Shown here: in pieces, positions 30,673 through 58,610 of the stretch
How the letters are laid out: every line of letters begins with the position of its first letter
Position numbering within the stretch: position 1 is the stretch's first letter
IMG/VR virus record: IMGVR_UViG_3300027759_006101
Span: 248,001 to 312,000 of that record
Length of the DNA stretch: 64,000 nucleotides
Direction: 5' to 3' (one strand)
Position numbers and translations under genes: made by a program
Notes under the pieces: model-generated
What the model was told of the DNA's origin: nothing
The model's database searches: none
The model's input: only the letters and a program-made list of their open reading frames with translations

Positions 30673-30698
30673 AGGTAGTGATCTGGATTATATTGAAA
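30673..30698 (+). promoter_or_regulatory. putative late promoter AGGT-N18-GAAA
   Basis: in the divergent intergenic region; same motif and spacing recur before other virion-type genes. Confidence 0.5.
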
Positions 30699-30758
30699 GA
30701 AAAATCTATAAATCGGTTTGGTTTCTAAGATGATGAAATCATTTAAGGAGTTTGAATA

Positions 30759-31631
30759 ATGCCAACTTATCCATCTTCGCTTTTATTGGGAGTTGCACCA
30801 GGAATAAGATCTGTTAACAATTATAATAACAGATTTGAATTTAGATTTGACAATGAGCCAACTGCAATGTCACTCGCTGGTTTTGCAATTTCAGCAGGTA
30901 CAGGCGCAACATTACAAAGTTCACCTACATATTCAGGTAATGTTCTAACAGGTTCTGGTTCAACAACTTTATTTATAGATGGTGTTTTATATACTGATAC
31001 TGCAACAACAGTTTTAGTAAAAGACCAATCTAATGCAATTCAGAATGGTGTCTATACTCTTTCTAAAGCTGGTTCTGCATCTACATACTGGCAATTAACA
31101 AGAGACACCAGATTTGATGAAGATGCTGAGCTTAAGAGAAATACAATTTTCTCTGTCACAAACGGAACTGTAAACGCATCCCAGAAGTTCTTCTTATCTT
31201 CTGACGAGCCTATTATTCCAGGTACTAGTAGCATAACATTCGGCGCTCTTGGCACTACTGTTGTTTATCCAAGTGCTGCAAAATATCCTACTGACGTAAA
31301 TGTAGGTACAGCAGAAAGAACAAGCGCAACAATGTTTATTGAAGACTTTAGGTCTATGCTTAATACAATTCAATATGACTTGACAGCTTTGGAAACTTCT
31401 TTTTCAAGCGTTTCAACTGAAGGTTTAAAGTGGATGGCTTCTTCAAACATCAACACAATCCAAAACCTTTATAGAAAATTCAGAAAAATAAGCTATGAAA
31501 TTACAAAATTAAGAGGCGATATCGACAGAATGAACACTGTTGGATTTGCTGCTTCATTCCCTGGAATTGGTCTTACTTCTACATATCCATCTGGCAAAAA
31601 TAGATTAACTAATATTGCTGGTGGATATTAG
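30759..31631 (+). CDS. probable virion protein, paralogue of 31736-32245, with inserted VLVKDQ..QNGVY domain
   Basis: AAGGAG SD; shares MPTYPSS, SAAKYPTDV and YPSGxNRxTN with the next gene. Confidence 0.75.
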   Translation: MPTYPSSLLLGVAPGIRSVNNYNNRFEFRFDNEPTAMSLAGFAISAGTGATLQSSPTYSGNVLTGSGSTTLFIDGVLYTDTATTVLVKDQSNAIQNGVYTLSKAGSASTYWQLTRDTRFDEDAELKRNTIFSVTNGTVNASQKFFLSSDEPIIPGTSSITFGALGTTVVYPSAAKYPTDVNVGTAERTSATMFIEDFRSMLNTIQYDLTALETSFSSVSTEGLKWMASSNINTIQNLYRKFRKISYEITKLRGDIDRMNTVGFAASFPGIGLTSTYPSGKNRLTNIAGGY

Positions 31632-31735
31632 AAGGAATAAGCGTCGGAGAAACAAAATTAATCTATTGAAAACAAAAAATATGTTTATTAGTTTTGTTTC
31701 TTCGAAGAAAATGATACGGTATAAGGAGTACTAAT

Positions 31736-32245
31736 ATGCCAACATATCCATCAAGTTTATACAAAGGTACAGCAAGATCAGCCAACGGTACTACTAACGA
31801 TCCAGGCTCATACCTTTGGAACAACTTAACCACCTATCAAGAGTTAAAAGATACTACAATTGGTAATGGCTCTGGCCCTAACGACACAACAACTGTAACT
31901 TTTAATTCTGCAGCAAAATACCCAACTGACGTGACATTTGGTGGCACTGCAATTGGTTCATCAACATATGAAGATTTTGATTTAATTCAATCTACTTTAT
32001 CTACTTTGATTACAAATTATGGTACTGCGGTTTCAGGTATTACAGCAACTGAAAAAGAGATTGCTGCAAACTTCTCTGGAATTTCTTACAACAATCTTCA
32101 ATCAAAAATGGAGAAGATTGCTTTTGAACTCAACAGATTAATTGCTGATATTACATTAGTTAATGCTGGTACTGCAGTAACAACTGCATTAGGTAGATAT
32201 CCATCTGGATGGAATAGATTTACCAACACTTCTGGCGGTATCTAA
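31736..32245 (+). CDS. probable virion protein with helical C-terminal half
   Basis: AAGGAG SD; paralogue of the preceding gene; followed by a strong terminator. Confidence 0.75.
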   Translation: MPTYPSSLYKGTARSANGTTNDPGSYLWNNLTTYQELKDTTIGNGSGPNDTTTVTFNSAAKYPTDVTFGGTAIGSSTYEDFDLIQSTLSTLITNYGTAVSGITATEKEIAANFSGISYNNLQSKMEKIAFELNRLIADITLVNAGTAVTTALGRYPSGWNRFTNTSGGI

Positions 32246-32263
32246 TCTTTTTTATCACCTACT

Positions 32264-32297
32264 AAAAAAGAGGGGAGAGAAATCTCCCCTCTTTTTT
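32264..32297. terminator. bidirectional intrinsic terminator
   Basis: aaaaaagaggggaga-GAAA-tctcccctctttttt between convergent genes, with A and T tracts on either side. Confidence 0.9.
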
Positions 32298-32917: not shown

Positions 32918-32997
32918 CTCCTTTTCATTTCAAGCAGGAAATCACTTGAAATCTTTTATATTATAAAATGTAAGTGTTTTAATCTGAGAAAAATCAT

Positions 32998-34258: not shown

Positions 34259-34269
34259 TTCTCCTCCGA

Positions 34270-34590: not shown

Positions 34591-34601
34591 TCAACACTAC
34601 C

Positions 34602-35360
34602 TCAAGTAAATATTCTATTGTAATATTCCTCGTATGTATTGTAACTGTCCTCGTCTTCCATAACTACAAAAATATTTTTAATTTTGCAATTTTTCTCTGA
34701 GTTCAAGAATGTTTTTATAGCTGATAATTGAACTCGGGCAGAATCATTGATATCTAAAGTTCCACAATCACTAGGCAACATTACAATATTTCTAGCTTCT
34801 TCTTGGTTTGCTAAAATAAGAGCTTTTTTGATTGCTGACTTTGTATCAGCTTCATTTACAAGCCTGCTCTCTCCTGCTACTACTGCATGATAAACTTTCT
34901 GAGGTTTAACTTTAGAATCACCAAAACCATTTGAAGTAATATATACGGTGCCCATTTTGATTGGTTTTGAGAATTTATCACATTCAAATTGAATTCTGCC
35001 TCTTGACATACGATTGAGCAGAGGATCGTCTATAGTAAGGCCAATATTCGTTGGGTAAACCAAAACATCTGACTTGACAAGATAAGGGTTTTCAACTTTG
35101 TGGATACTTACTTTAGTACTTTCGACAAATTCTTCAGTGATTTGTTTTACAGCTGGTTCGTCAATAACTTCTTGAGATTTAGATTCTTTTGTTTCTTCTT
35201 TGTACGAACACTTAAGAATAGAACCTTCGCAATCAGAAATCCATTTTTCTTGAATTACTGAAAATTCTTTTTTCAATAAAAAAGCTACTAATCTTGGGTT
35301 TGAAATTAACTTGAGAGCACATTCTGATGTTTGAGTGTAAAGTGGGCAAATTTGATCCAT
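34602..35360 (-). CDS. macrodomain-containing protein, degenerate active site
   Basis: SDVLVYPTN, GTVYITS, VYHAV, NIVMLP follow macro-fold order; Gly-rich loops missing. Confidence 0.75.
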   Translation of the reverse strand: MDQICPLYTQTSECALKLISNPRLVAFLLKKEFSVIQEKWISDCEGSILKCSYKEETKESKSQEVIDEPAVKQITEEFVESTKVSIHKVENPYLVKSDVLVYPTNIGLTIDDPLLNRMSRGRIQFECDKFSKPIKMGTVYITSNGFGDSKVKPQKVYHAVVAGESRLVNEADTKSAIKKALILANQEEARNIVMLPSDCGTLDINDSARVQLSAIKTFLNSEKNCKIKNIFVVMEDEDSYNTYEEYYNRIFT

Positions 35361-35378
35361 ACTTTAGTTATACAGATG

Positions 35379-36131: not shown

Positions 36132-36133
36132 TT

Positions 36134-37297: not shown

Positions 37298-38248
37298 TTA
37301 AAACTTCTTCTTCGGAGACAATTCTCTATCATCTCTAAGCCAGTAATCTAGCAAGCCCCTATATTTTATATGATCAATAGCATTTTTCATTTCATCTGAC
37401 TTCAAAGGCAAAACAGGTTGAGCTAATGATAAACCTTTCAATGCGTTTAGTCCGATGTTTCCTAGGCCACGTAATCTGCTTTTTATTCTATTCAAATACA
37501 AGCCCTCTAATCCTTCGAGAGCTTTGATAAATTTTCTTTGTGATAAATTATTTGTAAGAAGTTCTTTTTCTAAGCCTGCTAGATTATTTTGAAATTCGTC
37601 TCTTTGGCTTTTCATATCCTCTGTTCTATCTAAACTTTTTTTCTCAATTTTTAAATAATATAAAAGTTTATTTTGAGCATCATTGTAATTTTTTCTGTGT
37701 TGATAGATTTTTTCTTTCTCTTTTTCTGAGCAATTAGAAGGCAATGAGTCAATACTCTTCCTTAATTGTGACGGTTCTAATATCTCATCTAAAGAGGCTT
37801 TTTTATTTATTTCACTAGTGTAACAATTATAACTATCTTCATCTTCTTGCACAGGAATATCAAAACTTTCATCTGGCAATTCATCAACGGGACTAGTAGT
37901 TGTGGTTGTCAGAGTAGTTACAGGTGTAGATGTTTCAGTTTTTTCCGAATACATAGATACATCGCCAATGTCAGTATACTTTGGCTCATCTTCTATTCTT
38001 GGTGTTTCTTCAGATACAATGATTGGCTCAGGATAATTTTTCAAGCTGAATATACGCTTTACATCATCAACATTATATTTTTCAGCTTCAGGTACATCTT
38101 CTTGTTTGACCTTTGCTACAGATGCACCCGGCGCATTCCAATTGACAGTAAAAAAGTAAGTTTTTCTAGCTGCATAGACATATTTAGCATTTTTATTATG
38201 CTCTTCTAAATATGATTGAGCTAACTTAATTATTTTTTCTTGGTCCAT
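37298..38248 (-). CDS. hypothetical protein, candidate head-associated protein
   Basis: KIIKLAQ, KYVYAA, INKKAS motifs; preceded by late-type promoter. Confidence 0.6.
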   Translation of the reverse strand: MDQEKIIKLAQSYLEEHNKNAKYVYAARKTYFFTVNWNAPGASVAKVKQEDVPEAEKYNVDDVKRIFSLKNYPEPIIVSEETPRIEDEPKYTDIGDVSMYSEKTETSTPVTTLTTTTTSPVDELPDESFDIPVQEDEDSYNCYTSEINKKASLDEILEPSQLRKSIDSLPSNCSEKEKEKIYQHRKNYNDAQNKLLYYLKIEKKSLDRTEDMKSQRDEFQNNLAGLEKELLTNNLSQRKFIKALEGLEGLYLNRIKSRLRGLGNIGLNALKGLSLAQPVLPLKSDEMKNAIDHIKYRGLLDYWLRDDRELSPKKKF

Positions 38249-38257: not shown

Positions 38258-38283
38258 TTTCAGAAATCTAGGTCTTTCATCCT
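38258..38283 (-). promoter_or_regulatory. putative late promoter AGGA-N18-GAAA, 9 nt before ATG
   Basis: aagga-tgaaagacctagatttct-gaaatata on the minus strand; no SD. Confidence 0.55.
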
Positions 38284-39632
38284 TCTAAAATATATTTGCT
38301 GGGTTCAAGGACTGTTTCTTTAGTTACTTTGATTTTTATTTTTTCTTGATTATTTACGCCCAAATATTCGAATGCTGCTGAAGATAAAGACATCTTCACA
38401 ATAGAATTAAGTGCTCTTGTTCCAGTACCTGCTTTGATAGCTTTATTAATTACTTCTTCTAAAAAATCTTCTTCAAAATCTAAGATAACATTAGATTCAG
38501 CAAATAATAATTGATGCTTCTTCACAGGGCTATCTTCTAATTGCGTAAGACAATAAAGCATTTGTTCTCTGTCTAATGGAATCAAAGGAACAATTGATTG
38601 AATTCTGCCTACAAATTCAGTTGACATACCAAATTCAATTAAACTTTCGGCCAAAACCTCGTGAGATGCCTTATTGTAGATTTCATAATTTTTAACTTGA
38701 GCATCGTACTCATTGGTTTTTGTATTTCTGAAGCCTATTGTTCCTTCAGTAAGACCTAGTTTTTTAGCAACGATTTTTTCCAAACCATTAAATGCTCCGC
38801 CAAAACAAAATAAAATATTAGAAGTATCCACTACTACAGGTGGCGTACCTTGCTCTCCTAAGGCAGCAGAGCTAACTTTAACTTTTTTCCCTTCAATAAG
38901 TTTGAGTAATGTACTTTGAGTTGAATAGTGAAAACTCTCAAGTCTTGTTGCAGCACTCATATTTGATGCTAATTTGTCAATCTCATCAATAAATACAACA
39001 CCTTTTTCAGCTAATCCAGGTTCACCATTTGCTTTTAATAATAAATCAGTTATGACAGAATCAGCATCAGATCCTTGAAATCCTGTGGGTGAAAATGATG
39101 TAGCATCGCCCGAAACGAAAGGAACGTCTAAATACTTTGAAATTGTATTTACGATCAATGTTTTACCAGAGCCTGAAGGGCCTAAAAACAAGATATTTTG
39201 CTTATCATTACTGACTGAATTATGGATGTTTCGCATATGTTCAAAAACAGCTAAACTAATTCTTTTTTTTGCTATATCTTGACCAACGACTTTTTTGTTG
39301 AGGTTTTCATATAAATCTTTAGGATTGACATATTTGAATTTCTTAATGTCACTCGTGAATAAAAACTTTTTTGATAATGGTGCTATTTCTGCAAGCTTCA
39401 TTTTCAGATCAAGTACTGGACTCTCATTGTCACAACTTGAAATAAGAGAAATAACATTTTGATGAACTTGAAGTTGTCCAAATTTATTTCCTGTCAAATA
39501 CGATTTGTAACAAGCATCACACAAATGCATTTTTACTAACCTGTTTGCGAAAATTTCAATTTCTCCAAGAACGTCTTTAGTTGCAGGCCTACTACAAAAG
39601 TTACATTCAATTCCTTTAAGTTGTTTCAACAT
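38277..39632 (-). CDS. clpX: ClpX-like AAA+ unfoldase
   Basis: N-terminal CNFC..CDAC zinc finger, VVGQDIAK, Walker A GPSGSGKT, Walker B FIDEIDK, IGF loop, EFVGR; AGGAGG SD. Confidence 0.9.
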   Translation of the reverse strand: MLKQLKGIECNFCSRPATKDVLGEIEIFANRLVKMHLCDACYKSYLTGNKFGQLQVHQNVISLISSCDNESPVLDLKMKLAEIAPLSKKFLFTSDIKKFKYVNPKDLYENLNKKVVGQDIAKKRISLAVFEHMRNIHNSVSNDKQNILFLGPSGSGKTLIVNTISKYLDVPFVSGDATSFSPTGFQGSDADSVITDLLLKANGEPGLAEKGVVFIDEIDKLASNMSAATRLESFHYSTQSTLLKLIEGKKVKVSSAALGEQGTPPVVVDTSNILFCFGGAFNGLEKIVAKKLGLTEGTIGFRNTKTNEYDAQVKNYEIYNKASHEVLAESLIEFGMSTEFVGRIQSIVPLIPLDREQMLYCLTQLEDSPVKKHQLLFAESNVILDFEEDFLEEVINKAIKAGTGTRALNSIVKMSLSSAAFEYLGVNNQEKIKIKVTKETVLEPSKYILEG

Positions 39633-39648: not shown

Positions 39649-39656
39649 ATTATACA
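39649..39656 (-). promoter_or_regulatory. sigma70-like -10 box TGTATAAT for clpX
   Basis: same octamer before dnaK; close variants before the macrodomain gene and at 62731. Confidence 0.55.
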
Positions 39657-39715
39657 TTATAGGCAGGATTTGTTTTAGATTTATAATAAATATTTAATGT
39701 AATGGAGGGAAACAT

Positions 39716-39949
39716 ATGGCAGTAGTTGACAATAATTCACAGAATAGAGGCTTTGGGAAATGGAAAGTTCAAACTTACAATCCAACAGCTCTTATTGGAC
39801 CTATTGACGGTGTATTGATTGTAAGCAAAGATTTTTACACAATTTTCAAAGATGAGAAGTTGATCAATTGTCTTTTCAATGTACCAAGTCAAAATGTTGC
39901 TTTTGCATATAACGAAATTCACGTACAAGATTTAATGATTCAAAAATGA
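39716..39949 (+). CDS. hypothetical protein
   Basis: GGAGGG SD; preceded by AGGA-N18-TAAAT. Confidence 0.7.
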   Translation: MAVVDNNSQNRGFGKWKVQTYNPTALIGPIDGVLIVSKDFYTIFKDEKLINCLFNVPSQNVAFAYNEIHVQDLMIQK

Positions 39950-41849: not shown

Positions 41850-41857
41850 AGGTTTTT

Positions 41858-41883
41858 ATTCTCTTTTTACTTTATAAAAGCCT
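41858..41883 (-). promoter_or_regulatory. putative late promoter AGGC-N18-GAAT, 8 nt before ATG
   Basis: aaggc-ttttataaagtaaaaaga-gaataaaaacctATG on the minus strand. Confidence 0.55.
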
Positions 41884-47300: not shown

Positions 47301-50161
47301 TTTATAATTCAAGCATTAGAAAATCGACTAGCGGCATTTATCAAATAATTTATATTGACACTAATTTTAATTACTACTTAAGAAAAGTCAAAAATAATTC
47401 AGTAAATGGGCATCTTGATTATTCAAAAAGATTAGTTGCTCAATCTTCAATTGGTGGAACAATTTTTTATCTTGCACGTCCAGAAACTTCTACGACAGTG
47501 TTCACTTGGACTAATTCAAATTATCCAGTTTCTTTATCTGACGTTTATTTAGTTTCAACTGGTAACACAGTTATTCCAAAAACTTACTCAACTGATTACA
47601 CAATAAACCCAAGTAATGGTCAAATCAGTGTTGTAGGTTCTGGCTGGACTGGGACATTGTATGTACATCTTTATGCAGATAATACAGTCCCTTCTTATGA
47701 CGCAGAACCGAAACAAATACTAAATAGATATTATTACATCCCACGAGTAACCAAAGACAGATTTATTTTTACTTCCGGAGTTGCTTTAGGTTCATCTACT
47801 TGGCAAATTGATTCTGAGCATTTTCAAGTAGTAAACAGCATTGGAACTGCTACTACTACTGAAATTAAATTTAATAGAGATAGAAGTTCTTGGCTTGCAG
47901 ATTATGACACAAGCAAGAATTATAGCTCAGTAGCTCAACACATTTTAAGTAGCGACTCAGTATCAAATTATTTCTTCACAGACAGATTGTCATCAGATGG
48001 GTATTATTTTAAAACTGGATTAGGGAATTCGAGTGTTTTCAACGACACAAATCTTATTGATCCAATTACTCTTAATAAAATTGGCTTATTCACTGGTGAT
48101 TTCTATTTAGAAAAGTTAATAAATTCAGGAATTGGAGCTACTCTTACAGACTGGTACGCTGGTTTGGGATTGACTGTTGATGCTAATGTACTAATTTTAA
48201 CTAATAAAACCACACCAGATTATAGCGACAAAATAATAGATTCTTCATATCAATCTTCTTATTATGATGATTTGAATAGATTAATTCTGCAAGATAAAAC
48301 TGGTAAACGATACCAGAAAGTTTACACATTCAAAAGAAATGAATATCAAACTGTCAACTTAGATTATCATTCAGCTTTCGGAGTTACATTATCACCGATT
48401 CAAGCAATTTTGACTAATTCTGCCGGAAGTGGAACATTTGTTTTATATTACGATCCCGCTAATACAAACAGAAACACAAGCAATCGTTCTTGGATTGATG
48501 TTGCTACAAGATCTAGCTTCTTGTGTGCAACAGGTAACACAGGTAGTGTTCCAGATTTCAATGATATAACTTATGTTCCTGTGATAGGGCCTTTGAGTTC
48601 ACCATCTGGGTCAGGTAACACAGCGCAGTTCGATGGTTACGTAGTTGGCACTGGCGATACTATTATGATTAGAAATCAATCAGATAGTACTAAAAATGGC
48701 ATCTATACTTCAGTTGTTAGAAACAAATACACTTTAGTGAGAGCTACTGATTTAAATGCAACTTCAGAATTATATGAGTTAGGTAGAGTTTCATTTGGTA
48801 ATAGAATTTTTGAATTAAATCTGCCAGATGATAATTCTTCATATAACTTAGGAGCGTCAGCGTTAAATACTCCGCTTATATGGAAAAATTTGGGTTCTGA
48901 GTATGTCATCGATGTTGTCGGTTTAGGACATACTAATTTTTCAAATCTAAACGCACTTCCTGATTATATCAATGGAAGAGAAATTAGTGAAGGAAATAAA
49001 GTTTTCTTTTTTGGACAAACTACAAATTCTGAAAAAATAGTTGCAAGATTTAGAAAAAAAGTAATGCCTAATCTAACAAGAGTAGGTAATGGATCAAGTA
49101 CAACTCAATTCCAAATTTCAAGTTTGTACGTAAATGATGCAAATAGAAATATAAACTATGAATTGTATTATGATCCCTCATTGACTTCAGTTGGAACACA
49201 TCCCGTACAATGGTTTAGACAAAATTTTATATCAAATTTTTCACCAGTTTCTTTTGGAAGCACTATCCCGTTAAGTGTCAATAATTTTATTATATTAAAT
49301 GCACAAAAAGGAGATAGAATTTTACTTTTCAATCAAACAAATGAAACTGAAAATGGCATCTATTATTACGACATTGTGAGAAACTTCTATCTGTCAAGAG
49401 ATGAATTTTTAGATTCTGATGATGAAATTTCTGTTGACAAAAAAGTATATGTTTCATCTGGTTTTGCAAACACAGGATATTACGGCTTAAGCTTTGATGA
49501 AGACGTAGTAAGTCCAGGAATTGGTATTACTCCAATATATTGGACAAAAATTAGAGAAAACACAACATTGACTGACGCTAGAGTTGCATCAATTGCAAAT
49601 ATAAATCTAACAAATCCTCCATCGAAAGTTGATGAAATTACTTTAAGAAAATTTGATAGAATTTTACTTAAAAATCAAACATCACAAACTGAAAATGGAG
49701 TCTATATAGTTTCAAGCATAGGTAATTCAAATGTTTGGACCAGAGCCACAGATTTAGATTCAAGTTCAGAACTAATACCTCAACTTTCTGTCAATGTTGG
49801 ATACGGCACTACTAATTCTAATAAAAACTTTAGAATTAAATTGCCAGTTCCAAGAACAATCACTAATACACAAACAACTGCTTACATATTAAACACCGAT
49901 AACATTAATTGGATTGACACATCTTCATCTGAGTTATATGAATCAAGCCCTGAATTATGGCAAAACTTAAAAGCAGGGTATGAAAATGCTGTTTTTCTTG
50001 GGACAGCAAAAATGGGTGTAGAGTCAACAGCTTCTAGTCGTAGTTTTGGAATTGCAGTAAGAACACCAAATTCTACTATTTTATCAGGTTTTGGAATCAC
50101 ACAAAATGGTAAAGTAAGAGGATTAAATTTCAAAGTAGAATATAAAATTACAAAGGACTAA
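44333..50161 (+). CDS. large virion structural protein (1942 aa) with ~11-12 DRVLVKxQ..NGIY domains
   Basis: repeats such as DRVLVKDQSAKSENGIY and DRILLKNQTSQTENGVY; same domain in 30759-31631. Confidence 0.75.
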   Translation: MAHAFLWTELNSSNNTEVSREISSAGFGTNTSTTWTKKLFKLKWINSDVENIRLWIDNEYANIYNTSHYPTIKNTSNLKIIEDLGFEFKFTVFDTFIVNQTNADLATSSNLGSTTIVSSNFLIAPSYIDGIALDTNKKILVKSQSDAKTNGLYKVSSTSGQGTYGGIVAEDILTAAKIVTLNNASYFLYSVGLSPFQSAAAGSTSFKWVNRSTLYQLANVDCATENNLQQSAVGLSTPSLVLDNHTLSTNDRVLVKDQSAKSENGIYFVSSLYQPNANTYYNPYNSSLAADDFWDSALDFIRSNNSLSVQFVNSAVGNSGGYFRYYSGSGLTGGTASTSDLKWANAAYNYKHFGVNWYYEISSGSAIGFSFDLSSNSGTLTSTPRQIVNSSGIATTLATNERVLVKHYLPSFSGIYTVSNVGSGSTGLWVRNTAFDSSSEITQTVVSVANNTNSLGGNIWYLGKTETYNSLFLLNIDPITIQERYYPYTYEPVNNLVNANQTDLTTVNEVYFSNSGIAISQRVLVSGQTSFPAQNGIYSVSSICDVVYGLKLNDNYSVLRGSVARIVNGNTGAGTTYMLYAPGTNTSPGAIGVTWVDITNITNIRCNAETTVNKFSSQYITPNDFDVAVAVGTTVLVRIDDETRNGIYTVSAIGNSQKQIFNYENALSSWTFDIFESVLSEGPAGSHNVSPNFKKQIKGIYQIASIASTETGQIFVPEISFPSFQNYENFFGSEGKGSSLLQDLDIDWYKQDFQKYSVKAVLNVADVSLIPTTSGTAISSLVRSHSGLGNTILQSNDSVLIFVGSGSSSSSALNGIYRPSFTGIGSVYFTQHEDFYFDTKFESTTDKKSLASPYERPSVVSVEQGYMGVGTTFQSKYVYMQGEVAIRANTFSSDYSTEDLEKYLHTGTETFKIGSEIRLNTNTQDLDKFPRLAPIQHTLLADLALDTVSNDILIVKRNGNQLYSLVSGDPSLFYFQINDRVFYYATDEDIYNSSIRKSTSGIYQIIYIDTNFNYYLRKVKNNSVNGHLDYSKRLVAQSSIGGTIFYLARPETSTTVFTWTNSNYPVSLSDVYLVSTGNTVIPKTYSTDYTINPSNGQISVVGSGWTGTLYVHLYADNTVPSYDAEPKQILNRYYYIPRVTKDRFIFTSGVALGSSTWQIDSEHFQVVNSIGTATTTEIKFNRDRSSWLADYDTSKNYSSVAQHILSSDSVSNYFFTDRLSSDGYYFKTGLGNSSVFNDTNLIDPITLNKIGLFTGDFYLEKLINSGIGATLTDWYAGLGLTVDANVLILTNKTTPDYSDKIIDSSYQSSYYDDLNRLILQDKTGKRYQKVYTFKRNEYQTVNLDYHSAFGVTLSPIQAILTNSAGSGTFVLYYDPANTNRNTSNRSWIDVATRSSFLCATGNTGSVPDFNDITYVPVIGPLSSPSGSGNTAQFDGYVVGTGDTIMIRNQSDSTKNGIYTSVVRNKYTLVRATDLNATSELYELGRVSFGNRIFELNLPDDNSSYNLGASALNTPLIWKNLGSEYVIDVVGLGHTNFSNLNALPDYINGREISEGNKVFFFGQTTNSEKIVARFRKKVMPNLTRVGNGSSTTQFQISSLYVNDANRNINYELYYDPSLTSVGTHPVQWFRQNFISNFSPVSFGSTIPLSVNNFIILNAQKGDRILLFNQTNETENGIYYYDIVRNFYLSRDEFLDSDDEISVDKKVYVSSGFANTGYYGLSFDEDVVSPGIGITPIYWTKIRENTTLTDARVASIANINLTNPPSKVDEITLRKFDRILLKNQTSQTENGVYIVSSIGNSNVWTRATDLDSSSELIPQLSVNVGYGTTNSNKNFRIKLPVPRTITNTQTTAYILNTDNINWIDTSSSELYESSPELWQNLKAGYENAVFLGTAKMGVESTASSRSFGIAVRTPNSTILSGFGITQNGKVRGLNFKVEYKITKD

Positions 50162-51284: not shown

Positions 51285-51311
51285 TTATTTCAAATTTGGC
51301 TTGTTTTTCGT

Positions 51312-51349
51312 ATAATGCTATGGTATAAAAATCATAGCATTATTTTTTT
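51312..51349 (+). terminator. hairpin plus T-tract overlapping candidate gyrB -10 boxes
   Basis: ataatgctatg...catagcattat-tttttt. Confidence 0.65.
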
Positions 51350-53491: not shown

Positions 53492-56003
53492 AAGACCAAA
53501 GGTTGAAGATACAACAACAATTATTGATAAAGAAGACCACATTATCAACAAAGAGTTCATCGAACTCTTAGATGATCGGTTTACCAATTACGCTTTTGCA
53601 GTAATGGAAGATCGTGCTCTGCCTGATGCAAGGGATGGTTTAAAGCCATCCCAACGCAGAACTCTTGTCGCAATGAATGACTTGAATTTGCGTTCATCTG
53701 GTAAGACTAAAAAATGTGCAAAGATCTGTGGTGATGTTTCAGGTAACTACCATCCTCACGGAGAAGCGGTTGTCTATCCAACACTTGTTCGTATGGCACA
53801 AGTTTGGTCTTTGCGCTACCCATTGATTTCCCCTCAAGGAAACTTTGGCTCACCAGCACCAGAAGACAAGCCTGCTGCTATGCGTTACACCGAAGCGAAA
53901 TTTTCTGCTTTTGGTGATCAAATGGTTGCTGAGCTTTCAAATCAAGTTGTAGATTATGTATCTAACTACAATGATGAGTTGATGGAACCAACTGTTATGC
54001 CTTCCCTGATTCCAAACCTATTAATCAATGGGTGTTCTGGAATTGCTGTTGGCTGGGCGACAAATATGGCACCTCATAACTTGCGTGAAGTGGCTAATTT
54101 GATTGACGCTTATATCAAAAATCCTGAAATTACAGTAGATGAAATTTTAGAGATTGTTCCAGGCCCAGATTTCCCTCTACCTTGTAAGATTCTCGGAACT
54201 AATGGAGTGAAGAGTTACTTTACAACTGGAAGGGGCTCTATTCAATTGGAAGGCTACCATACAATTGAATCTGAGAAGAACGGTCAGCTTTACATTAAGG
54301 TCACTGCACTTCCATACGGTGGTTCTGCTGAAGGCTTTTGTCGTGAAATCAAAGAACTTGTTGAATCTAAGAAAATTGAAGGCATCACAAACCTCAAGAA
54401 TCTTACAAACAAGAAGGGTATGGATGTCAGGATTTGGATCCATAAATCAGCAAATTCAAATGTTGTTTTAAATCTAATTCTCAAGCATACTTCTTTGCGA
54501 ACAAATTTCTCTGTTAACTCAACAGTACTTATGGGTGGCAAGAAAGTTGTTGAAAATGTTCCTATTATCAAACTTGTAGAAACATTTGTAGAACACCGCA
54601 AAGATGTTTTAACTAGAAAATTTAATGCAGAACTTGATAAAAATAATCGAAGACTCCATATCCTTGATGGTCTCATTGGCATTACCGCTAAAATTGATTC
54701 GGTTATTAAGCTCATCCGTCAAGCTGATGATAGGAATGTGGCACAACAAGAACTCATTGCCCAAGGATTTGTAAAGTCTCCTGAGCAGGCTGATGCAGTT
54801 TTGAAGATTACTTTGGGAAATCTTACTAAACTTGATGTCAACTCTATGACTGATGAGTTCTCAAAGCTCACACACCGAAATGAGTGGCTTGTTGAACAGC
54901 TTTCTTCAGAAAAGAAAATGCTCAGGCTAATTTCTAAAGAGCAACTTGATCTTGCTGCAAAGATTGGCGATGATAGACGGTCAGAAATTGTACCTTCCAT
55001 AGAAGATTTCAATTATGAAGACTTGATTAAAGAAGAGCAAATCATCGTATCTCTTACAAAAGATGGCTACATCAAGCGTGTTCCATTGGATACTTTCAAG
55101 ACACAAAATCGTGGTGGAAAAGGTGTCATTGGCGTAAAGTCTCGTGAAGAAGATGAGGCTTCAGACTTCTTTTCAGGCACGACTCACGATTTGTTCTTGT
55201 TCTTTACAAATCAAGGTAATTTGCTGAAGAAAAAGGGCTATGAAATTCCATTAGCAACAAGAACTTCCAAGGGTGTTCATCTTAACAATCTTTTGAACTT
55301 GACTGAAGCAGAATCAGTATCATCAACAATTACACTCAAAAGTTTAGATGTTGATGGCAACTTTGTTATGGTCACTAAGAAAGGTCTCATCAAGAGGTCT
55401 GAGATTAGAGACTACAACACCAGTCTTCGTAAAAGAGGACTAAAGGCCATCTCATTAACTGAAAATGATGAGTTAGCATTTGTAATGCAAACAGATGGTA
55501 CTCAAGATGTTATGATTGTCACAGCAATGGGAATGGCTGTAAGGTATTCAGAAAATCTTGTACGGTGTATTGGCAAAAATGGGCAAGGTAGTCGCTCAAT
55601 GCTTCTAAAAGCAGAAGATACAATTGCTGCAGTTCTAGCAATTGATGCTGATGCTGATCCTTCAATTCTGGTAATTACTGAATTTGGTAAGGGTAAGAAG
55701 ACTTTTGCTTCTGAATACCGTTCTACTGCTGGTAGAGCAGTCAAAGGCCAAAGAACAATCAACACTCTTAAGAGAGAAGCTTCTGGAAAAATTGTAAGTG
55801 CAGTGGCATTATCAGATAATGATGAAATATTAGTGCTTACAAACAAGGGCAAAATGATGAGATGTAATCTTGACTCTCTTCGAAATAAATCCAAAGTCAC
55901 ACAAGCAAATAACATTGTGTCCCTTGATGACGGAGACACTGTGCAAACTGTTAGTGTAGTTCCAACTTCAAATAAGGACTTTGAAGAGGAGTTTACAGAA
56001 TAA
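53484..56003 (+). CDS. gyrA: DNA gyrase subunit A
   Basis: RALPDARDGLKP, YHPHG, AAMRYTE (catalytic Tyr), GPDFP, GyrA box QNRGGKG, C-terminal pinwheel repeats. Confidence 0.97.
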   Translation: MARRPKVEDTTTIIDKEDHIINKEFIELLDDRFTNYAFAVMEDRALPDARDGLKPSQRRTLVAMNDLNLRSSGKTKKCAKICGDVSGNYHPHGEAVVYPTLVRMAQVWSLRYPLISPQGNFGSPAPEDKPAAMRYTEAKFSAFGDQMVAELSNQVVDYVSNYNDELMEPTVMPSLIPNLLINGCSGIAVGWATNMAPHNLREVANLIDAYIKNPEITVDEILEIVPGPDFPLPCKILGTNGVKSYFTTGRGSIQLEGYHTIESEKNGQLYIKVTALPYGGSAEGFCREIKELVESKKIEGITNLKNLTNKKGMDVRIWIHKSANSNVVLNLILKHTSLRTNFSVNSTVLMGGKKVVENVPIIKLVETFVEHRKDVLTRKFNAELDKNNRRLHILDGLIGITAKIDSVIKLIRQADDRNVAQQELIAQGFVKSPEQADAVLKITLGNLTKLDVNSMTDEFSKLTHRNEWLVEQLSSEKKMLRLISKEQLDLAAKIGDDRRSEIVPSIEDFNYEDLIKEEQIIVSLTKDGYIKRVPLDTFKTQNRGGKGVIGVKSREEDEASDFFSGTTHDLFLFFTNQGNLLKKKGYEIPLATRTSKGVHLNNLLNLTEAESVSSTITLKSLDVDGNFVMVTKKGLIKRSEIRDYNTSLRKRGLKAISLTENDELAFVMQTDGTQDVMIVTAMGMAVRYSENLVRCIGKNGQGSRSMLLKAEDTIAAVLAIDADADPSILVITEFGKGKKTFASEYRSTAGRAVKGQRTINTLKREASGKIVSAVALSDNDEILVLTNKGKMMRCNLDSLRNKSKVTQANNIVSLDDGDTVQTVSVVPTSNKDFEEEFTE
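55975..56001 (+). promoter_or_regulatory. putative late promoter AGGA-N19-GAAT inside the gyrA 3' end
   Basis: 9 nt before the ATG at 56011. Confidence 0.5.
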
Positions 56004-56010
56004 AATAATT

Positions 56011-56397
56011 ATGGCTAATTCGTTGTATGACAGTGGTAGAGATGGATTCCTCAAGGGTGAATTCAACTGGAGTTCTGATACTTTCAAAGTAATTTTACTT
56101 TCGTCAGCATATTCAGTAAATCTATCAAGTCATACAACGACAGCAAATATTGGTGGAACAGTTGCTATCTCAGGTGGTTTATCAACATTAGTCCCTGGTG
56201 CTGGTGTAGCAGATGCTAATGACATTACATTATCAAGCGTAGCTGGAACAACTGTAACGCAATTTGTAATTTTCCATGATTCTTCAAAAAAACTTGTAGC
56301 TCACATTAATGACTCAACAAACTTACCTTTTACGCCTAGTGGAGGAAATGTAACTTTGCAATGGGATAATGGAGTAAATAAAATTTTCAAGCTGTAG
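56011..56397 (+). CDS. phage virion structural protein; start corrected to MANSLYD
   Basis: MANSLYD..FL.G..NW..DTFKV, GVADAND, LPFTPSGG.V.LQWDNG.NKIFKL pattern recognised from phage structural regions. Confidence 0.7.
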   Translation: MANSLYDSGRDGFLKGEFNWSSDTFKVILLSSAYSVNLSSHTTTANIGGTVAISGGLSTLVPGAGVADANDITLSSVAGTTVTQFVIFHDSSKKLVAHINDSTNLPFTPSGGNVTLQWDNGVNKIFKL

Positions 56398-56419
56398 AAC
56401 TCAATCTACAGCTTTTTTT
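56389..56419 (+). terminator. intrinsic terminator
   Basis: aagctgtaga-actcaa-tctacagctt-ttttt. Confidence 0.8.
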
Positions 56420-56465
56420 ATAGGTATTGCAGGTGTTTATTGGAAAAATATAATTAGGACTTGCA

Positions 56466-57296
56466 ATGGAAAACTATACAATAGAATCTTGGATACATAA
56501 AAAGTATTATTTTGACTCTTCAAAAAATGGAGTTGTCATCCCACCAGCTTATGATTCTGGGGGGACTGGTGGCACAGATGGCGGTGGTGGAGGCGGTGGT
56601 GGTGAGTCTGGTTCAGGTTCAACCACTTTCTTAAGCACCACCGACTTGATACTTAATTTAAGAGCTTCAGATACTGATTCATATCCTGGCACTGGATTAT
56701 ACTGGTACGACTTAACATCGTATGGAAATAACGGTATTTTTTACAATGGGGCGGCTGTAACAGGCACAGGTAATTCAAAAGCATTTATATTTGATGGTAC
56801 TGACACATACTTTGGAATTGGAAGAAATATTACTCAAAACACAACTAATGTAAGTATGTCTGCCTGGGTTAAGACTTCTAACAACCTAATAGCTGGTCAG
56901 ATGATTGTATACAACGGTAGTGAAGCTAGACTAAATGGTTATGGCTTTTCCATAAATAGAGATGGTATTACATCTGGAAATATTTACGTAAGATATGGAG
57001 ATAGCCAATGGTTTAACACAGGAATTGCCATTACAAGCAATCATTGGCATTATATTACTTTGAACATTTTATCAGACAGAAGACCTCAAGTATTTGTTAA
57101 TGGTGCTATAGGATACACAGGTTCAGCTGCAAGAATCAACACTCCAACAAACTACACTGAAGTTGGACGAAGTGATTATCCTGTTTCAAGATACTTCTAC
57201 GGATACATTGCTCAAGTTCACGCTTATAAAAAGGCACTTACATCTACTGAAATTCAAGGAAATTTCAACAGCACTAAAACACCTTATGGGTATTGA
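56466..57296 (+). CDS. LamG/ConA-like protein with N-terminal peptide and poly-Gly linker
   Basis: SYPGTGLYWYDL, FIFDGTD, NHWHYITL, YKKALTSTEIQGNFN. Confidence 0.85.
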   Translation: MENYTIESWIHKKYYFDSSKNGVVIPPAYDSGGTGGTDGGGGGGGGESGSGSTTFLSTTDLILNLRASDTDSYPGTGLYWYDLTSYGNNGIFYNGAAVTGTGNSKAFIFDGTDTYFGIGRNITQNTTNVSMSAWVKTSNNLIAGQMIVYNGSEARLNGYGFSINRDGITSGNIYVRYGDSQWFNTGIAITSNHWHYITLNILSDRRPQVFVNGAIGYTGSAARINTPTNYTEVGRSDYPVSRYFYGYIAQVHAYKKALTSTEIQGNFNSTKTPYGY

Positions 57297-57310
57297 TAAG
57301 GAATTAAAAT

Positions 57311-57628
57311 ATGCTTAATAACGAATTCTTAACAGGTACAACTCTTAATATTTATGCTGAATTAAAAGATGAAAGTGGATATGGAGTTACAACTACTGGT
57401 TTAACCTTTTATATGACTGAACCAGGGGGAATTGGCTATACTTATTATTTTGGGTCAGGTTCAGGTAGCGGAAACTCAGAGCCTGTTCAAGCTGGTATTG
57501 CGACTGGCATATATTATAAACAATGGACTCCAAGCAGAACAGGTGTACATAAATATTCCTGGAAGGCATCAGGAAGTATTCAAGCTACATTCAAGAGCTT
57601 TTTTGATGTCAAGAGTGGTGAGTGGTAA
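57311..57628 (+). CDS. small beta-sandwich virion protein
   Basis: AAGGA SD; GIYYKQWTP..GVHKYSW. Confidence 0.65.
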   Translation: MLNNEFLTGTTLNIYAELKDESGYGVTTTGLTFYMTEPGGIGYTYYFGSGSGSGNSEPVQAGIATGIYYKQWTPSRTGVHKYSWKASGSIQATFKSFFDVKSGEW

Positions 57629-58584
57629 TGGCTTTTCCTGGAATTCTTTCAAGAGCTGAGCTTTCTTCTGGTCTTAACACAAAAAGTATATGTGTTAATG
57701 GAAATTACCTTATTGTCGAGCAATGCAACATCAATCAAGAACAAGAGCATAATGTAAATAATTACATTCAAGGTGGTCCTGCCTATGCTATCTACAATCT
57801 AGGTGCTAGAAAGCATGTGGGTAATTTTTCATTTCCTTTACGTGTAGATCAAAATGGTAATTTAGAAGAAGCAGCAAAAGTAATTTTACGTCACGCAGCA
57901 AAGCCTATGACTTCCTTGAGAATAGACACTCACAACGTTCTTTCTTCATTTTCAACCACTGTAGTTAATCCAGGCACAGATGATAACAAAAATTTATCTC
58001 TAGATTCTTGTGTTATAAGTAATCTTAAAATTACTGTCAGTGAAGGTGGAGACGTTAATGCAAGTGTTGATTTTATAGGAATGCTTGACATAGAAACGGA
58101 ATCTACATTTGATTTTTCGTCTGATTATCTTATGGGAAGAAGGCTAAATTTTGCTGATTGTAATGCATTTAGAAAAGAATCATCAATGAGAGGCACATCT
58201 TCAATAACAATCAATATTGAAAATGAAGTGGTAACACCAGTATTTCTTATGCCTTATTATTCAAATAAATTTGTTGGTTCTGGAGTTACTGAACAAAAAG
58301 ATCAGATTGAGCTTCTAGCAGTTCAATCTACTAAGTGGTCTGGAGAATTTACAGAAGTTATCAGAAACGGTCTTGATTTATATACTTTCATCCACGGTGG
58401 TTTGATGCATGATGAAAACTTAACTTTAGACATTGGAAACTTAAGAACCACTTTTTATAACCCAGTTTTCAAAATTGCTCAATCTCCATTAACAACACAA
58501 GTAATAAGGAGAACTACAGAGTGGGTTGGAATTAATAAACCAGATGATTCTATGTTGGATGATCGACTGTTTACTTTTTTATAA
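57628..58584 (+). CDS. tail-tube-like protein; start corrected to MAFPG
   Basis: TAATG overlap; beta-strand pattern; distant paralogue of the next gene. Confidence 0.5.
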   Translation: MAFPGILSRAELSSGLNTKSICVNGNYLIVEQCNINQEQEHNVNNYIQGGPAYAIYNLGARKHVGNFSFPLRVDQNGNLEEAAKVILRHAAKPMTSLRIDTHNVLSSFSTTVVNPGTDDNKNLSLDSCVISNLKITVSEGGDVNASVDFIGMLDIETESTFDFSSDYLMGRRLNFADCNAFRKESSMRGTSSITINIENEVVTPVFLMPYYSNKFVGSGVTEQKDQIELLAVQSTKWSGEFTEVIRNGLDLYTFIHGGLMHDENLTLDIGNLRTTFYNPVFKIAQSPLTTQVIRRTTEWVGINKPDDSMLDDRLFTFL

Positions 58585-58610
58585 AGGTAAACCAAATTAA
58601 TTATAAGAAT
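58585..58610 (+). promoter_or_regulatory. putative late promoter AGGT-N18-GAAT
   Basis: aaaggt-aaaccaaattaattataa-gaataaa. Confidence 0.55.

What the first reader, a model, noticed from the sequence alone, without database searches (positions are those of the whole stretch)
30673..58610. Recurrent SigH-like promoter motif marks virion genes
Seen: AGG[ATC]-N18-GAA[TA] at 30673(+), 38283(-), 41883(-), 58585(+); an N19 version at 55975(+); weaker versions (AAAT/TAAAT) at 31633, 39665, 50162, 56422. All precede structural or tag-bearing/hypothetical genes and none precedes gyrB, dnaK, clpX or the J-protein. Established: Bacillus SigH promoters are approximately AGGA-N18-GAAT. Inference: a phage-encoded or alternative sigma factor drives late transcription, and the motif can classify hypothetical genes as late.
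Basis: partly seen in the sequence, partly recalled or inferred. Interest (0 to 1): 0.62.

Follow-up and report, generated by a model that had tools for sequence, protein, structure and literature searches.

The report
SigH-type promoters in a jumbo phage
A 358-kb uncultivated lake-water jumbo phage carries a real, conserved two-box promoter class (ARG-N19-GAATAW) that looks like bacterial sigma-H promoters, and it also encodes a sigma-H-like factor, so it probably uses that factor to switch host RNA polymerase onto many of its virion genes.

Summary
The motif is at every stated coordinate. As a loose pattern over all DNA it is not enriched (16 hits against 14.6 expected). In intergenic DNA oriented towards the next gene it is strongly enriched, and only at one spacing.

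- **Sharper consensus:** aaA(A/G)Gt-N16-taGAATA(A/T). It is enriched again in three relatives with 45-50% protein identity. It is kept upstream of orthologous genes, in all four genomes for a 1450-aa virion protein.
- **Sigma factor:** the genome encodes four sigma factors. One matches SigH best and is the best match of the authentic SigH in a clostridial genome. In that genome spo0A and spoVG carry AGG-N19-GAATAA and AGG-N18-GAATTT.
- **Window sites:** robust sites are 30628-30655(-), 41856-41883(-), 58585-58612(+) and 62664-62691(-). 30673(+) and 38283(-) are off-consensus, and three of the four 'weak' sites are unsupported.
- **Target genes:** tail-fibre and virion genes, but also a NUDIX hydrolase and the small gene ahead of dnaK.

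Late timing and the sigma-promoter pairing are inferred, not shown.

The parts
58585..58612 (+). Best promoter-like site in the genome: AGGT-N18-GAATAA. It lies 60 nt upstream of the ATG at 58673 of a 338-aa protein of unknown fold, the last gene of the + block that follows a tail-tube-like gene.
   Evidence: Matrix score 18.2 bits. The ortholog in G002 keeps AGG-N19-GAATAA at 39% protein identity. Lake-water metatranscriptome contigs begin at 58643 and 58675 and cover the gene at depth about 20 in run X1, with depth 0 in X1 and X2 over 58201-58600.
30628..30655 (-). Promoter-like site AAGT-N18-GAATAT, 71 nt upstream of the 997-aa gene (27564-30557) that heads the long minus-strand block of tail-fibre and virion-structural genes.
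   Evidence: Matrix score 15.8 bits. Block annotation by PHROGs: tail fibre and virion structural proteins. Not conserved upstream of the orthologs in G001-G003.
41856..41883 (-). Promoter-like site AGGC-N18-GAATAA, followed by 6 nt and the ATG (41849) of a 160-aa protein that starts MWYR. The geometry is leaderless.
Evidence: Matrix score 14.9 bits. Geometry.
62664..62691 (-). Promoter-like site AAGT-N18-GAATAT, 15 nt upstream of the predicted start of a conserved 123-aa ORF (62278-62649). That ORF sits directly upstream of dnaK (60567-62261) on the same strand.
   Evidence: Matrix score 15.7 bits. The G002 ortholog (65% identity) keeps AGG-N19-GAATAT. dnaK has its own TGTATAAT box at 62270-62277.
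55975..56003 (+). Variant with a spacer one base longer (AGG-N20-GAATAA), followed by 7 nt and the ATG at 56011. That ATG is the likely true start of the phrog_644 protein.
   Evidence: Sequence. The PHROG match and the orthologs start at residue 11 of the long ORF. Orthologs in G002 and G003 have Shine-Dalgarno sites and no such box, so this is a probable but unconserved member.
39665..39693 (+). Weak variant AGG-N20-AAATAT upstream of a conserved small ORF (39716-39949).
Evidence: Orthologous positions hold AGG-N19/20-AAATAA in G001 and AGG-N20-GAATAT in G003.
50116..50143 (+). Consensus match AAGA-N18-GAATAT inside the last codons of the 1942-aa gene, 79 nt upstream of the gene at 50222. 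Status uncertain.
   Evidence: Matrix score 14.1 bits. Its conservation in G001 and G002 can be explained by the coding sequence (..KVEYK..).
30673..30698 (+). The downstream box is GAAAGA, not GAATAW. Possible weak divergent partner of the 30628(-) site. The downstream 290-aa protein has an Ig-like virion domain.
   Evidence: Below 9 bits. Not conserved upstream of the orthologs. PHROG hits to head decoration and tail fibre proteins.
38258..38283 (-). The downstream box is GAAATA, followed by 7 nt and the ATG at 38248. Status uncertain.
   Evidence: Sequence. Below 9 bits. The downstream gene has no ortholog in G001-G003, so conservation cannot be tested.
51310..51338 (+). Contrast element: GTATAAT box plus hairpin upstream of gyrB, of sigma-A type rather than SigH type.
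   Evidence: Conserved in all four genomes. Coordinates.
62270..62277 (-). Contrast element: TGTATAAT (extended -10 type) 8 nt upstream of the dnaK ATG.
   Evidence: Also TGTATAAT in G002 and a TGTACAAT variant in G001 and G003.
39649..39661 (-). Contrast element: tandem TATAAT boxes upstream of the clpX-like AAA+ gene (38277-39632).
   Evidence: Gene annotation.

Best explanation
The window belongs to a 358-kb uncultivated jumbo phage from lake water. No RNA polymerase of its own was detected, and it encodes four sigma-70-family factors.

ABOUT 17-25 transcription units carry a two-box promoter, aaA(A/G)Gt-N16-taGAATA(A/T). Written between the cores, this is ARG-N19-GAATAW, with occasional N20.

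This has the architecture of Bacillota sigma-H promoters. The most likely mechanism has three steps:
1. Host sigma-A holoenzyme transcribes early genes from TTGACA-N17-TGnTATAAT promoters. These include the operon that holds the phage's SigH-family sigma gene.
2. That sigma then binds host core polymerase.
3. The new holoenzyme starts transcription 7-9 nt downstream of GAAT at these promoters.

The genes switched on include:
- the tail-fibre and virion block;
- other virion proteins;
- a prohead-protease-domain protein;
- a LysM protein;
- several proteins with the N-terminal MWY(R/K) tag;
- a few non-structural genes, namely a NUDIX hydrolase and the ORF ahead of dnaK.

Shown here:
- the motif, its spacing and orientation specificity, and its conservation;
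- the existence and SigH affinity of the sigma factor;
- the separate sigma-A promoter class.

Inferred:
- which sigma reads the motif;
- the transcription start site;
- middle or late timing.
For: **1. Enrichment**
- ARG-N19-GAATAW has 15 of its 38 genome hits in forward-intergenic DNA, which is about 3% of strand positions. Other spacings give 0-4, apart from N20 with 8, which partly overlaps N19.

**2. Replication in relatives**
- G001-G003 have a median protein identity of 45-50% to this genome.
- N19 gives 5, 6 and 3 forward-intergenic hits there, against about 0.6-0.9 at other spacings.
- The G000-trained matrix at 12 bits or more gives 14 forward-intergenic hits against 1 antisense-intergenic hit.

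**3. Conservation upstream of orthologs**
- The boxes are kept upstream of the 1450-aa virion protein in all four genomes at 33-46% identity.
- They are also kept upstream of orthologs of the genes at window 58664 and 62278 in G002, and of a NUDIX-family MWY-tag gene in G001.

**4. Position like a -10 box**
- GAATAW sits 6-7 nt before the ATG at 9 gene starts (expected about 2.4).
- This parallels TATAAT-N6-ATG at 16 gene starts.
- Metatranscriptome contigs begin 31-63 nt downstream of the 58607-58612 box, with no coverage upstream in two runs.

**5. The sigma factor**
- The best NCBIfam hits of the 236-aa ORF are all SigH (E 1e-31 to 3e-30, full length). The next family scores about half as much.
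- Its best match in a Peptostreptococcaceae genome is the authentic SigH in the rlmB-sigH-tuf neighbourhood.
- The two align over 194 residues at 32% identity, with the 4.2 recognition helix conserved.
- It is kept at 68-94% identity in 44 related viral contigs.

**6. Authentic SigH targets**
- In that same genome spo0A carries AGG-N19-GAATAA and spoVG carries AGG-N18-GAATTT.
- The published boxes are RNAGGAWWW and RNNGAATWW.

**7. No phage polymerase found**
- No beta, beta-prime or T7-type RNA polymerase domain was detected.

**8. A separate early class**
- A sigma-A-type promoter cassette clusters at 154-181 kb, where no SigH-type site occurs.
- The operon holding the SigH-like gene starts with TATAAT-N6-ATG.
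Against: - No direct transcription start site or time-course data exist. The contig ends are imprecise, and one variant-strain contig runs about 77 nt upstream of 58646, across the promoter.
- The upstream box is AAG in 10 of the 17 training sites, whereas sigma-H prefers AGG.
- The sigma factor scores far below NCBIfam's SigH equivalog cut-offs (105 against 295 bits).
- Three other phage sigma factors could be the reader of the motif.
- The host is unknown. DnaK relatives gave no clear host signal.
- Several G000 sites are not conserved in relatives, for example 30628(-) and 230974(+).
- Targets are not exclusively virion genes.
- The refined consensus was derived from the same genome. The out-of-window and cross-genome tests reduce this circularity but do not remove it.
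Confidence: 0.6

Rival explanations
1. The promoters are real, but another of the phage's sigma factors reads them: the 188-aa, 189-aa (SigB/F/G/FliA-like) or 191-aa (ECF-like) protein. The SigH-like protein would then do something else, for example interfere with host development.
For: Four sigma genes exist. Phage sigma homologs of sporulation factors are known to alter host dormancy rather than drive phage genes (bioRxiv 10.1101/2021.11.12.468384). No experiment links any of the four sigmas to the motif.
Against: The box sequences and spacing match sigma-H promoters. From my own knowledge of the Bacillus subtilis consensus sequences, they do not match FliA, SigF/G or ECF promoters. The recognition helix of region 4.2 is conserved between the phage protein and the authentic SigH.
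Confidence: 0.15
2. The host's own sigma-H, or an equivalent host alternative sigma, reads these promoters. The phage would then tie virion production to the host's transition state.
For: The motif is indistinguishable in architecture from authentic spo0A and spoVG promoters.
Against: The phage and 44 relatives keep their own SigH-family gene at 68-94% identity. The host is unknown, and lake-water plankton is not rich in sporulating Bacillota (habitat; the ecology is my own knowledge). Depending on a stationary-phase host factor would be a fragile strategy for a lytic jumbo phage (inference).
Confidence: 0.12
3. The sites are degenerate sigma-A promoters, with TAGAAT read as a TATAAT variant, and no special sigma is involved.
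For: About half of the sites read TAGAAT. The phage clearly uses sigma-A-type promoters elsewhere.
Against: The conserved upstream box ARG at fixed spacing has no resemblance to TTGACA. There is no TG extension. The ATG lies 8-9 nt after TAGAAT, whereas TATAAT sites show a sharp 6-nt optimum.
Confidence: 0.07
4. The motif is a compositional accident of AT-rich intergenic DNA.
For: The whole-window count of the loose pattern is at chance. Matrix hits are as numerous in coding DNA as in intergenic DNA in absolute numbers.
Against: The evidence against is spacing specificity, orientation bias (14 forward to 1 antisense in the relatives), replication in three diverged genomes, and conservation upstream of orthologs.
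Confidence: 0.03

Closest known systems
Sigma-H (SigH/Spo0H) promoters of Bacillota
   Same: Both have two boxes with the same cores and the same distance. The published boxes are RNAGGAWWW and RNNGAATWW (PMC8510167). In a Peptostreptococcaceae genome, spo0A has AGG-N19-GAATAA and spoVG has AGG-N18-GAATTT. The phage motif is ARG-N19-GAATAW.
   Different: The phage sites tolerate AAG in place of AGG (10 of 17), prefer T after the core (AGGT or AAGT, not AGGA), and nearly always have A after GAAT. They drive phage virion and accessory genes, not transition-state genes. Many sit at leaderless distance from the ATG.
Bacillus phage SPO1 sigma cascade (gp28 for middle genes, gp33/34 for late genes)
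   Same: In both, a lytic phage without its own polymerase replaces host sigma-A with phage sigma factors that read distinct promoter classes. In a published tree, gp28 falls in the cluster that also holds SigH. From my own knowledge, the SPO1 middle upstream box is AGGAGA.
   Different: The downstream box differs (from my own knowledge, TTTNTTT in SPO1 middle promoters). The phage here is an unrelated, uncultivated 358-kb lineage with four sigma genes. No temporal data exist for it.
Phage T4 late transcription (gp55 and gp33, TATAAATA)
   Same: Both have a phage-encoded sigma-type factor and a promoter class in front of virion genes.
   Different: From my own knowledge, T4 late promoters have no upstream box and need the sliding clamp. 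The motif here has two boxes at strict spacing, and the sigma is a full SigH-like protein with regions 2 and 4.
Phage-encoded homologs of sporulation sigma factors (SigF/SigG-like) in Bacillota phages
   Same: Both are phage genes that automatic pipelines name 'sporulation-specific sigma factor'. The published examples are described in bioRxiv 10.1101/2021.11.12.468384.
   Different: The published examples are described as distinct from the sigmas that run the lytic programme, and they alter host dormancy. Here a matching promoter class sits in front of the phage's own genes, which argues for a role in the phage programme.

Membership tests
Sigma-H-type promoter | Downstream (-10) box RNNGAATWW | tested here: met
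   GAATA(A/T) is present, with A-rich bases after it. The same box recurs in the relatives' sites. The published box is quoted.
Sigma-H-type promoter | Upstream (-35) box RNAGGAWWW | tested here: inconclusive
   The core is A-R-G. It is AGG in 7 and AAG in 10 of the 17 sites, and the next base is T in 12 of 17 rather than A. The A-rich flank fits the consensus.
Sigma-H-type promoter | Distance between the box cores as in authentic sigma-H promoters | tested here: met
   The phage has 19 nt (sometimes 20) between ARG and GAAT. Authentic spo0A has 19 nt and spoVG has 18 nt in genome G007, which carries an authentic SigH.
Sigma-H-type promoter | Transcription starts a few bases downstream of the -10 box | tested here: inconclusive
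   The ATG lies 6-7 nt after GAATAW at 9 genes, which is leaderless geometry. Metatranscriptome contig ends lie at 58643 and 58675, downstream of the box at 58607-58612. No true 5'-end data are available.
Sigma-H-type promoter | Activity depends on a SigH-family sigma factor | not testable with these tools
   This needs in vitro transcription or reporter assays.
SigH sigma factor family (NCBIfam TIGR02859 / PRK08295) | Score above the curated equivalog cut-off | tested here: not met
   The scores are 105-110 bits against cut-offs of 208-295. The protein is a divergent relative, not an equivalog.
SigH sigma factor family (NCBIfam TIGR02859 / PRK08295) | Closer to SigH than to any other sigma family, and best match to an authentic SigH | tested here: met
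   The top five NCBIfam hits are all SigH models over the full length, and the next family scores 52 bits. The best match in G007 is the authentic SigH (E 2e-22; the second hit has E 3e-4).
SigH sigma factor family (NCBIfam TIGR02859 / PRK08295) | Conserved DNA-recognition helix of region 4.2 | tested here: met
   The stretch (V/I)DNAL(T/Q)R(I/V)(R/K)(K/R)K aligns between the phage protein and the authentic SigH.
Phage sigma-factor cascade (SPO1/T4 type) | Phage-encoded sigma factor or factors, and no phage RNA polymerase | tested here: met
   There are four sigma ORFs. No Rpb2_6, Rpb1_2 or T7-type polymerase domain was found. The T7-type control rang nowhere, and the record is 89% complete, so the absence is provisional.
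Phage sigma-factor cascade (SPO1/T4 type) | Distinct promoter classes for different gene sets | tested here: met
   The sigma-A cassette (TTGACA-N17-TGATATACT/TATAAT) clusters at 154-181 kb and also precedes gyrB, dnaK and clpX. ARG-N19-GAATAW sites lie elsewhere and precede virion genes.
Phage sigma-factor cascade (SPO1/T4 type) | Temporal switch from early to middle or late genes | not testable with these tools
   The phage is uncultivated, and only assembled metatranscriptome contigs were available.

The most novel reading that the evidence does not exclude
A widespread lineage of freshwater jumbo phages has captured a SigH-family sigma factor. Around it, the lineage has built a self-contained middle/late regulon of SigH-type promoters, many of them fused directly to leaderless start codons. 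The regulon includes a set of proteins that share an N-terminal MWY(R/K) tag and may be packaged into the capsid. This would be the first phage transcription programme run by a sigma-H-type factor, possibly in a host that has no sigma-H of its own.
Probability: 0.4. Interest if true: 0.65.

Novelty: new variant of a known kind. Interest (0 to 1): 0.52.

Why it matters
Nearly all genes of uncultivated jumbo phages lack annotation, and nothing is known of how their expression is timed.

- **Handle on unknown genes:** a verified promoter class with a plausible cognate sigma sorts unknown genes into co-regulated sets. Here these are tail-fibre and virion proteins, tagged proteins, a protease and a NUDIX enzyme.
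- **Testable without the host:** the pairing can be checked with the purified sigma, core polymerase and short promoter fragments.
- **Wider repertoire:** if confirmed, it adds the SigH family to the sigma factors that phages use for their own programme.
- **Possible tool:** the sigma-promoter pair could serve as an orthogonal expression part.
- **Annotation:** the many leaderless starts matter for calling gene starts in such genomes.

Tried and rejected
- **Whole-window count:** the loose pattern is not enriched. It is informative only together with position and orientation.
- **Naive matrix iteration:** iterating over all 42 columns drifted into AT-rich sequence and was abandoned.
- **Similarity searches:** a DNA search of the phage collection found nothing. 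A relative search with the 342-aa protein found nothing.
- **Host hints:** DnaK relatives were 33-56% identical and scattered over phyla.
- **Pfam:** seven large proteins gave nothing. Searches of the genome for terminase, T4-type capsid and tail-sheath families also gave nothing.
- **Fold of the 338-aa protein:** the prediction failed (mean pLDDT 33), so no fold search was made. Protein-atlas leads for it and for the 562-aa protein were below the useful score.
- **MWY tag and motif:** the association is only marginal. Four of 15 tag genes score above 8 bits, against 9% of other genes (Mann-Whitney P = 0.05).
- **Literature:** the original sigma-H regulon paper is not held. The consensus is cited from a later paper.
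- **Metatranscriptome coverage:** it said nothing about the 62664 site.
- **Degenerate sigma-A reading and chance:** both were considered and judged unlikely; see the rival explanations.

Full report
**Setting.** The window is bases 248001-312000 of a single 358,269-bp viral record. IMG/VR classes the record as linear, and CheckV estimates it 89% complete.
- GC content is 34%.
- A greedy longest-ORF call gives about 390 genes in about 86 strand blocks.
- Nine tRNA genes are present.
- No multisubunit or T7-type RNA polymerase domain was found.
- Window genes include the following:
  - a ClpX-like AAA+ protein, a DnaJ-domain protein, PhoH, GyrB, GyrA and DnaK;
  - a long minus-strand block (1-30557) whose products hit tail-fibre and virion-structural PHROGs;
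  - Ig-like, laminin-G-like and tail-tube-like proteins.

No alternative genetic code was needed. 

**Checking the observation.** Taken as a pattern on all DNA of the window, AGG[ACT]-N18-GAA[AT] is at chance: 16 matches against 14.6 expected. The picture changes when only DNA upstream of genes is considered.
- I extracted 156 intergenic regions of 40 nt or more from the whole genome, each oriented towards its downstream gene (17.6 kb in all).
- In these, the N18 pattern occurs 12 times against 1.85 in dinucleotide shuffles. None of 300 shuffles reaches 12. The spacings N15-N17 and N19-N21 stay at 0-2.
There, N18 gives 13 forward-intergenic hits, and nine other spacings give 0-5. Poisson P is about 6e-8.
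- At least two of these 13 belong to a different element, a GGTA..TACC hairpin followed by GAAA.

**A sharper consensus.**
- The first box is A-(A/G)-G, usually followed by T and preceded by A.
- The second box is GAATA(A/T), usually preceded by T-A.
- Written between the cores, the motif is ARG-N19-GAATAW.
- Fifteen of its 38 genome occurrences lie in forward-intergenic DNA, which is about 3% of all strand positions. Other spacings give 0-4. N20 gives 8, partly because AAGG contains both registers.
- The stricter form A[AG]GT-N18-GAAT gives 12 intergenic of 28 hits, against 0-3 of 36-57 at the other spacings.
- I derived this consensus from the same genome, so it needed outside confirmation.

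**Replication in relatives.** The SigH-like sigma protein described below retrieved 44 related viral contigs. I fetched three large ones whole: G001 (316 kb), G002 (261 kb) and G003 (the first 300,000 of its 300,536 bp).
- Their proteins are 45-50% identical to those of the window's genome at the median. Unconstrained intergenic DNA should therefore be scrambled.
- ARG-N19-GAATAW gives 5, 6 and 3 forward-intergenic hits in G001, G002 and G003, against about 0.6-0.9 at other spacings. Together this is 14 against about 2.3 expected, P about 2e-7.
- A box-only matrix trained on G000 and applied to the relatives gives 14 forward-intergenic hits, 1 antisense-intergenic hit and 29 coding hits at 12 bits or more. 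That is a 12- to 32-fold higher density in forward-intergenic DNA than in coding DNA.
- Orthologous positions keep the boxes:
  - the 1450-aa protein with an Ig-like virion domain has AGG-N19-GAAT in all four genomes at 33-46% protein identity;
  - the ortholog of the 342-aa ORF at window 58664 keeps the motif in G002;
  - the ortholog of the 123-aa ORF at window 62278 keeps it in G002;
  - a NUDIX-family gene with the MWY tag keeps it in G001;
  - the small ORF at window 39716 keeps variants of it in G001 and G003.
- Other sites, such as 30628(-) and 230974(+), are not conserved.

**Does the second box sit where a -10 box should?** Two indirect lines say yes.
- *Leaderless geometry.* The phage has a striking number of genes with TATAAT exactly 6 nt before the ATG: 16 cases, against 0-3 at other distances. 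This is the signature of leaderless transcripts that start at the A of the ATG. GAATAW shows the same kind of peak, at 6-7 nt: 9 cases against about 2.4 expected. Examples are window 41849(-) and, after correcting its start codon, window 56011(+).
- *Metatranscriptome contigs.* Four lake-water metatranscriptome runs were laid on window 58001-64000.
  - The gene behind the best site is covered from 58643 (X2) or 58675 (X1) to about 59750-60060.
  - Depth is about 20 in X1, and zero in X1 and X2 over 58201-58600.
  - The rest of the stretch, including dnaK, lies mostly at depth 0-5.
  - The 5' edge therefore falls 31-63 nt after the GAATAA at 58607-58612.
  - *Caveats.* These are assembled contigs, so neither ends nor depths are quantitative. 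One variant-strain contig runs about 77 nt further upstream.

**The sigma factors.** Pfam regions 2 and 4 of sigma-70 factors match four ORFs, all outside the window.

| Genome coordinates | Length | Best NCBIfam affinity |
|---|---|---|
| 68634-69344(-) | 236 aa | SigH (top five hits, E 1e-31 to 3e-26, 92-110 bits, full length) |
| 64302-64868(-) | 188 aa | unspecific |
| 203372-203947(-) | 191 aa | ECF-like |
| 219958-220527(+) | 189 aa | SigB/F/G/FliA-like |

- For the 236-aa protein, the next family reaches 52 bits. The scores are below the equivalog cut-offs of 208-295 bits.
- Its best match in a Peptostreptococcaceae genome is a protein that scores 347 bits on the SigH model. That protein lies between rlmB and tuf, the canonical place.
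- The two align over 194 residues at 32% identity, with the region 4.2 recognition helix conserved.
- JGI's pipeline names the phage protein family 'sporulation-specific sigma factor'.

**What authentic sigma-H promoters look like.** A paper on Bacillus thuringiensis spoVS gives the boxes as RNAGGAWWW and RNNGAATWW (PMC8510167). To avoid relying on memory for the spacing, I looked upstream of two classical SigH targets in the same Peptostreptococcaceae genome.
- spo0A has AGG-N19-GAATAA.
- spoVG has AGG-N18-GAATTT.

The phage motif therefore has the same cores and the same distance. The differences are that AAG is accepted (10 of 17 sites) and that T rather than A follows the core.

**A separate early class.** The region 154-181 kb, full of small ORFs, holds about 20 copies of a cassette. 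It reads: hairpin, TTTGTCAAAT, TTGACA, 17 nt, TGATATACT or TGATATAAT.
- None of the 17 SigH-type sites used to build the matrix lies between about 146 and 191 kb.
- gyrB has a GTATAAT box plus hairpin that is conserved in all four genomes.
- dnaK has TGTATAAT 8 nt before its ATG, and the clpX-like gene has tandem TATAAT boxes.
- The operon that contains the SigH-like gene begins with TATAAT-N6-ATG, and the 188-aa sigma gene has its own box of that kind.
- This fits a cascade in which host sigma-A comes first and the phage sigma afterwards. The timing itself is inferred.

**What the motif precedes.**

| Class | Genes behind a motif site |
|---|---|
| Virion-type | 997-aa gene heading the tail-fibre/structural block |
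| Virion-type | 1450-aa Ig-like protein |
| Virion-type | 1379-aa protein with a prohead-protease-like domain (its site has GAATAC) |
| Virion-type | 338-aa protein next to the tail-tube-like gene (weak tail/baseplate leads only) |
| Virion-type | tail-collar-like gene, in relatives only |
| Lysis-type | LysM protein |
| Other | NUDIX hydrolase |
| Other | 123-aa ORF ahead of dnaK |
| Other | subtilase, in relatives only, with the spacer one base longer |
| Unknown | many ORFs with no family match |

Four of the 15 have a good site, against 9% of other genes (P = 0.05). Many tag genes sit inside operons. 'Marks virion genes' is therefore a tendency, not a rule.

- *Confirmed strong:* 41883(-) and 58585(+).
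- *Probable variants:* 55975(+), with a spacer one base longer and leaderless geometry; and 39665(+), with an AAATAT box and boxes kept at the orthologous positions.
- *Unsupported or uncertain:* 30673(+), 38283(-), 31633, 50162 and 56422.
- *Missed:* 30628-30655(-) and 62664-62691(-). A match at 50116-50143(+) lies in coding sequence and stays uncertain.

**Novelty.**
- Phage-encoded sigma factors and promoter classes are classical knowledge, as in SPO1 and T4. Jumbo phages without their own polymerase are known to carry sigma genes (PMC7824862).
- Sporulation-type sigma homologs in phages have been described mainly as host-manipulating genes.
- My searches found no description of a SigH-family phage sigma paired with a SigH-type promoter class on the phage's own genes.
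- I rate this a new variant of a known kind. The pairing and the timing are still to be shown.

Noticed in passing
whole genome; in the window e.g. 35358-35373(-) and 62270-62277(-): There are many leaderless-type gene starts. TATAAT lies exactly 6 nt before the ATG at 16 genes of this genome, against 0-3 at other distances, and a weaker peak appears in G001. Several have TTGACA and a TG extension. This matters for start-codon calling, and it suggests a host that translates leaderless mRNA well.
   Followed up: partly
window 41849(-); genome 61590, 72482, 72846, 80599, 137894, 139862, 152708, 226895-229228, 236355 and others: Fifteen ORFs begin with the peptide MWY(R/K)xA, among them a NUDIX hydrolase, and a cluster of five lies at 226.9-229.2 kb. 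About ten ORFs in each of three relatives do the same. This could be a shared N-terminal targeting or processing signal, for example for capsid packaging. That reading is an idea only and was not tested.
   Followed up: partly
genome 154-181 kb (outside the window): About 20 copies of a composite early-promoter cassette occur here. It consists of the hairpin AGGnnnGGTAnnnACCnnnCCT, then TTTGTCAAAT, then TTGACA, 17 nt, and TGATATACT or TGATATAAT. The copies lie in front of small ORFs. The roles of the hairpin and of the TTGTCAAAT box are unknown.
   Followed up: partly
genome 191560-192770 (outside the window): A 1.2-kb stretch without ORFs holds about eight CTCGAA(A) boxes. Four of them are followed within about 20 nt by CTCTAAT. 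The stretch also has two SigH-type sites (191695 and 192733). The paired pattern is absent from the three relatives. It may be an origin, an iteron array or a non-coding RNA region.
   Followed up: partly
window 51310-51338(+): The gyrB leader has a GTATAAT box followed directly by a hairpin (GCTATGGTA..TCATAGC). The arrangement is conserved in all four genomes, which suggests a regulated 5' leader.
   Followed up: no
window 31697-31710: The palindrome TTTCTTCGAAGAAA lies about 25 nt upstream of the gene at 31736. It is also present upstream of related genes in G001 and G002. It may be an operator or another promoter element.
   Followed up: no
window 9015-13775(-): A run of seven adjacent ORFs of 218-261 aa lies inside the tail-fibre block. 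They look like a tandem paralog array. My greedy gene call left a 534-nt hole at 10466-10999, where two ORFs overlap.
   Followed up: no
genome 64302-64868(-), 203372-203947(-), 219958-220527(+) (outside the window): The genome has three further sigma-70-family genes: one unspecific, one ECF-like and one SigB/F/G/FliA-like. Their promoter classes were not searched for.
   Followed up: no
window 58001-64000: Lake-water metatranscriptome contigs from two studies carry this phage or close strains at 90-100% identity. The 338-aa gene at 58673-59692 is by far the best covered part of the stretch.
   Followed up: partly
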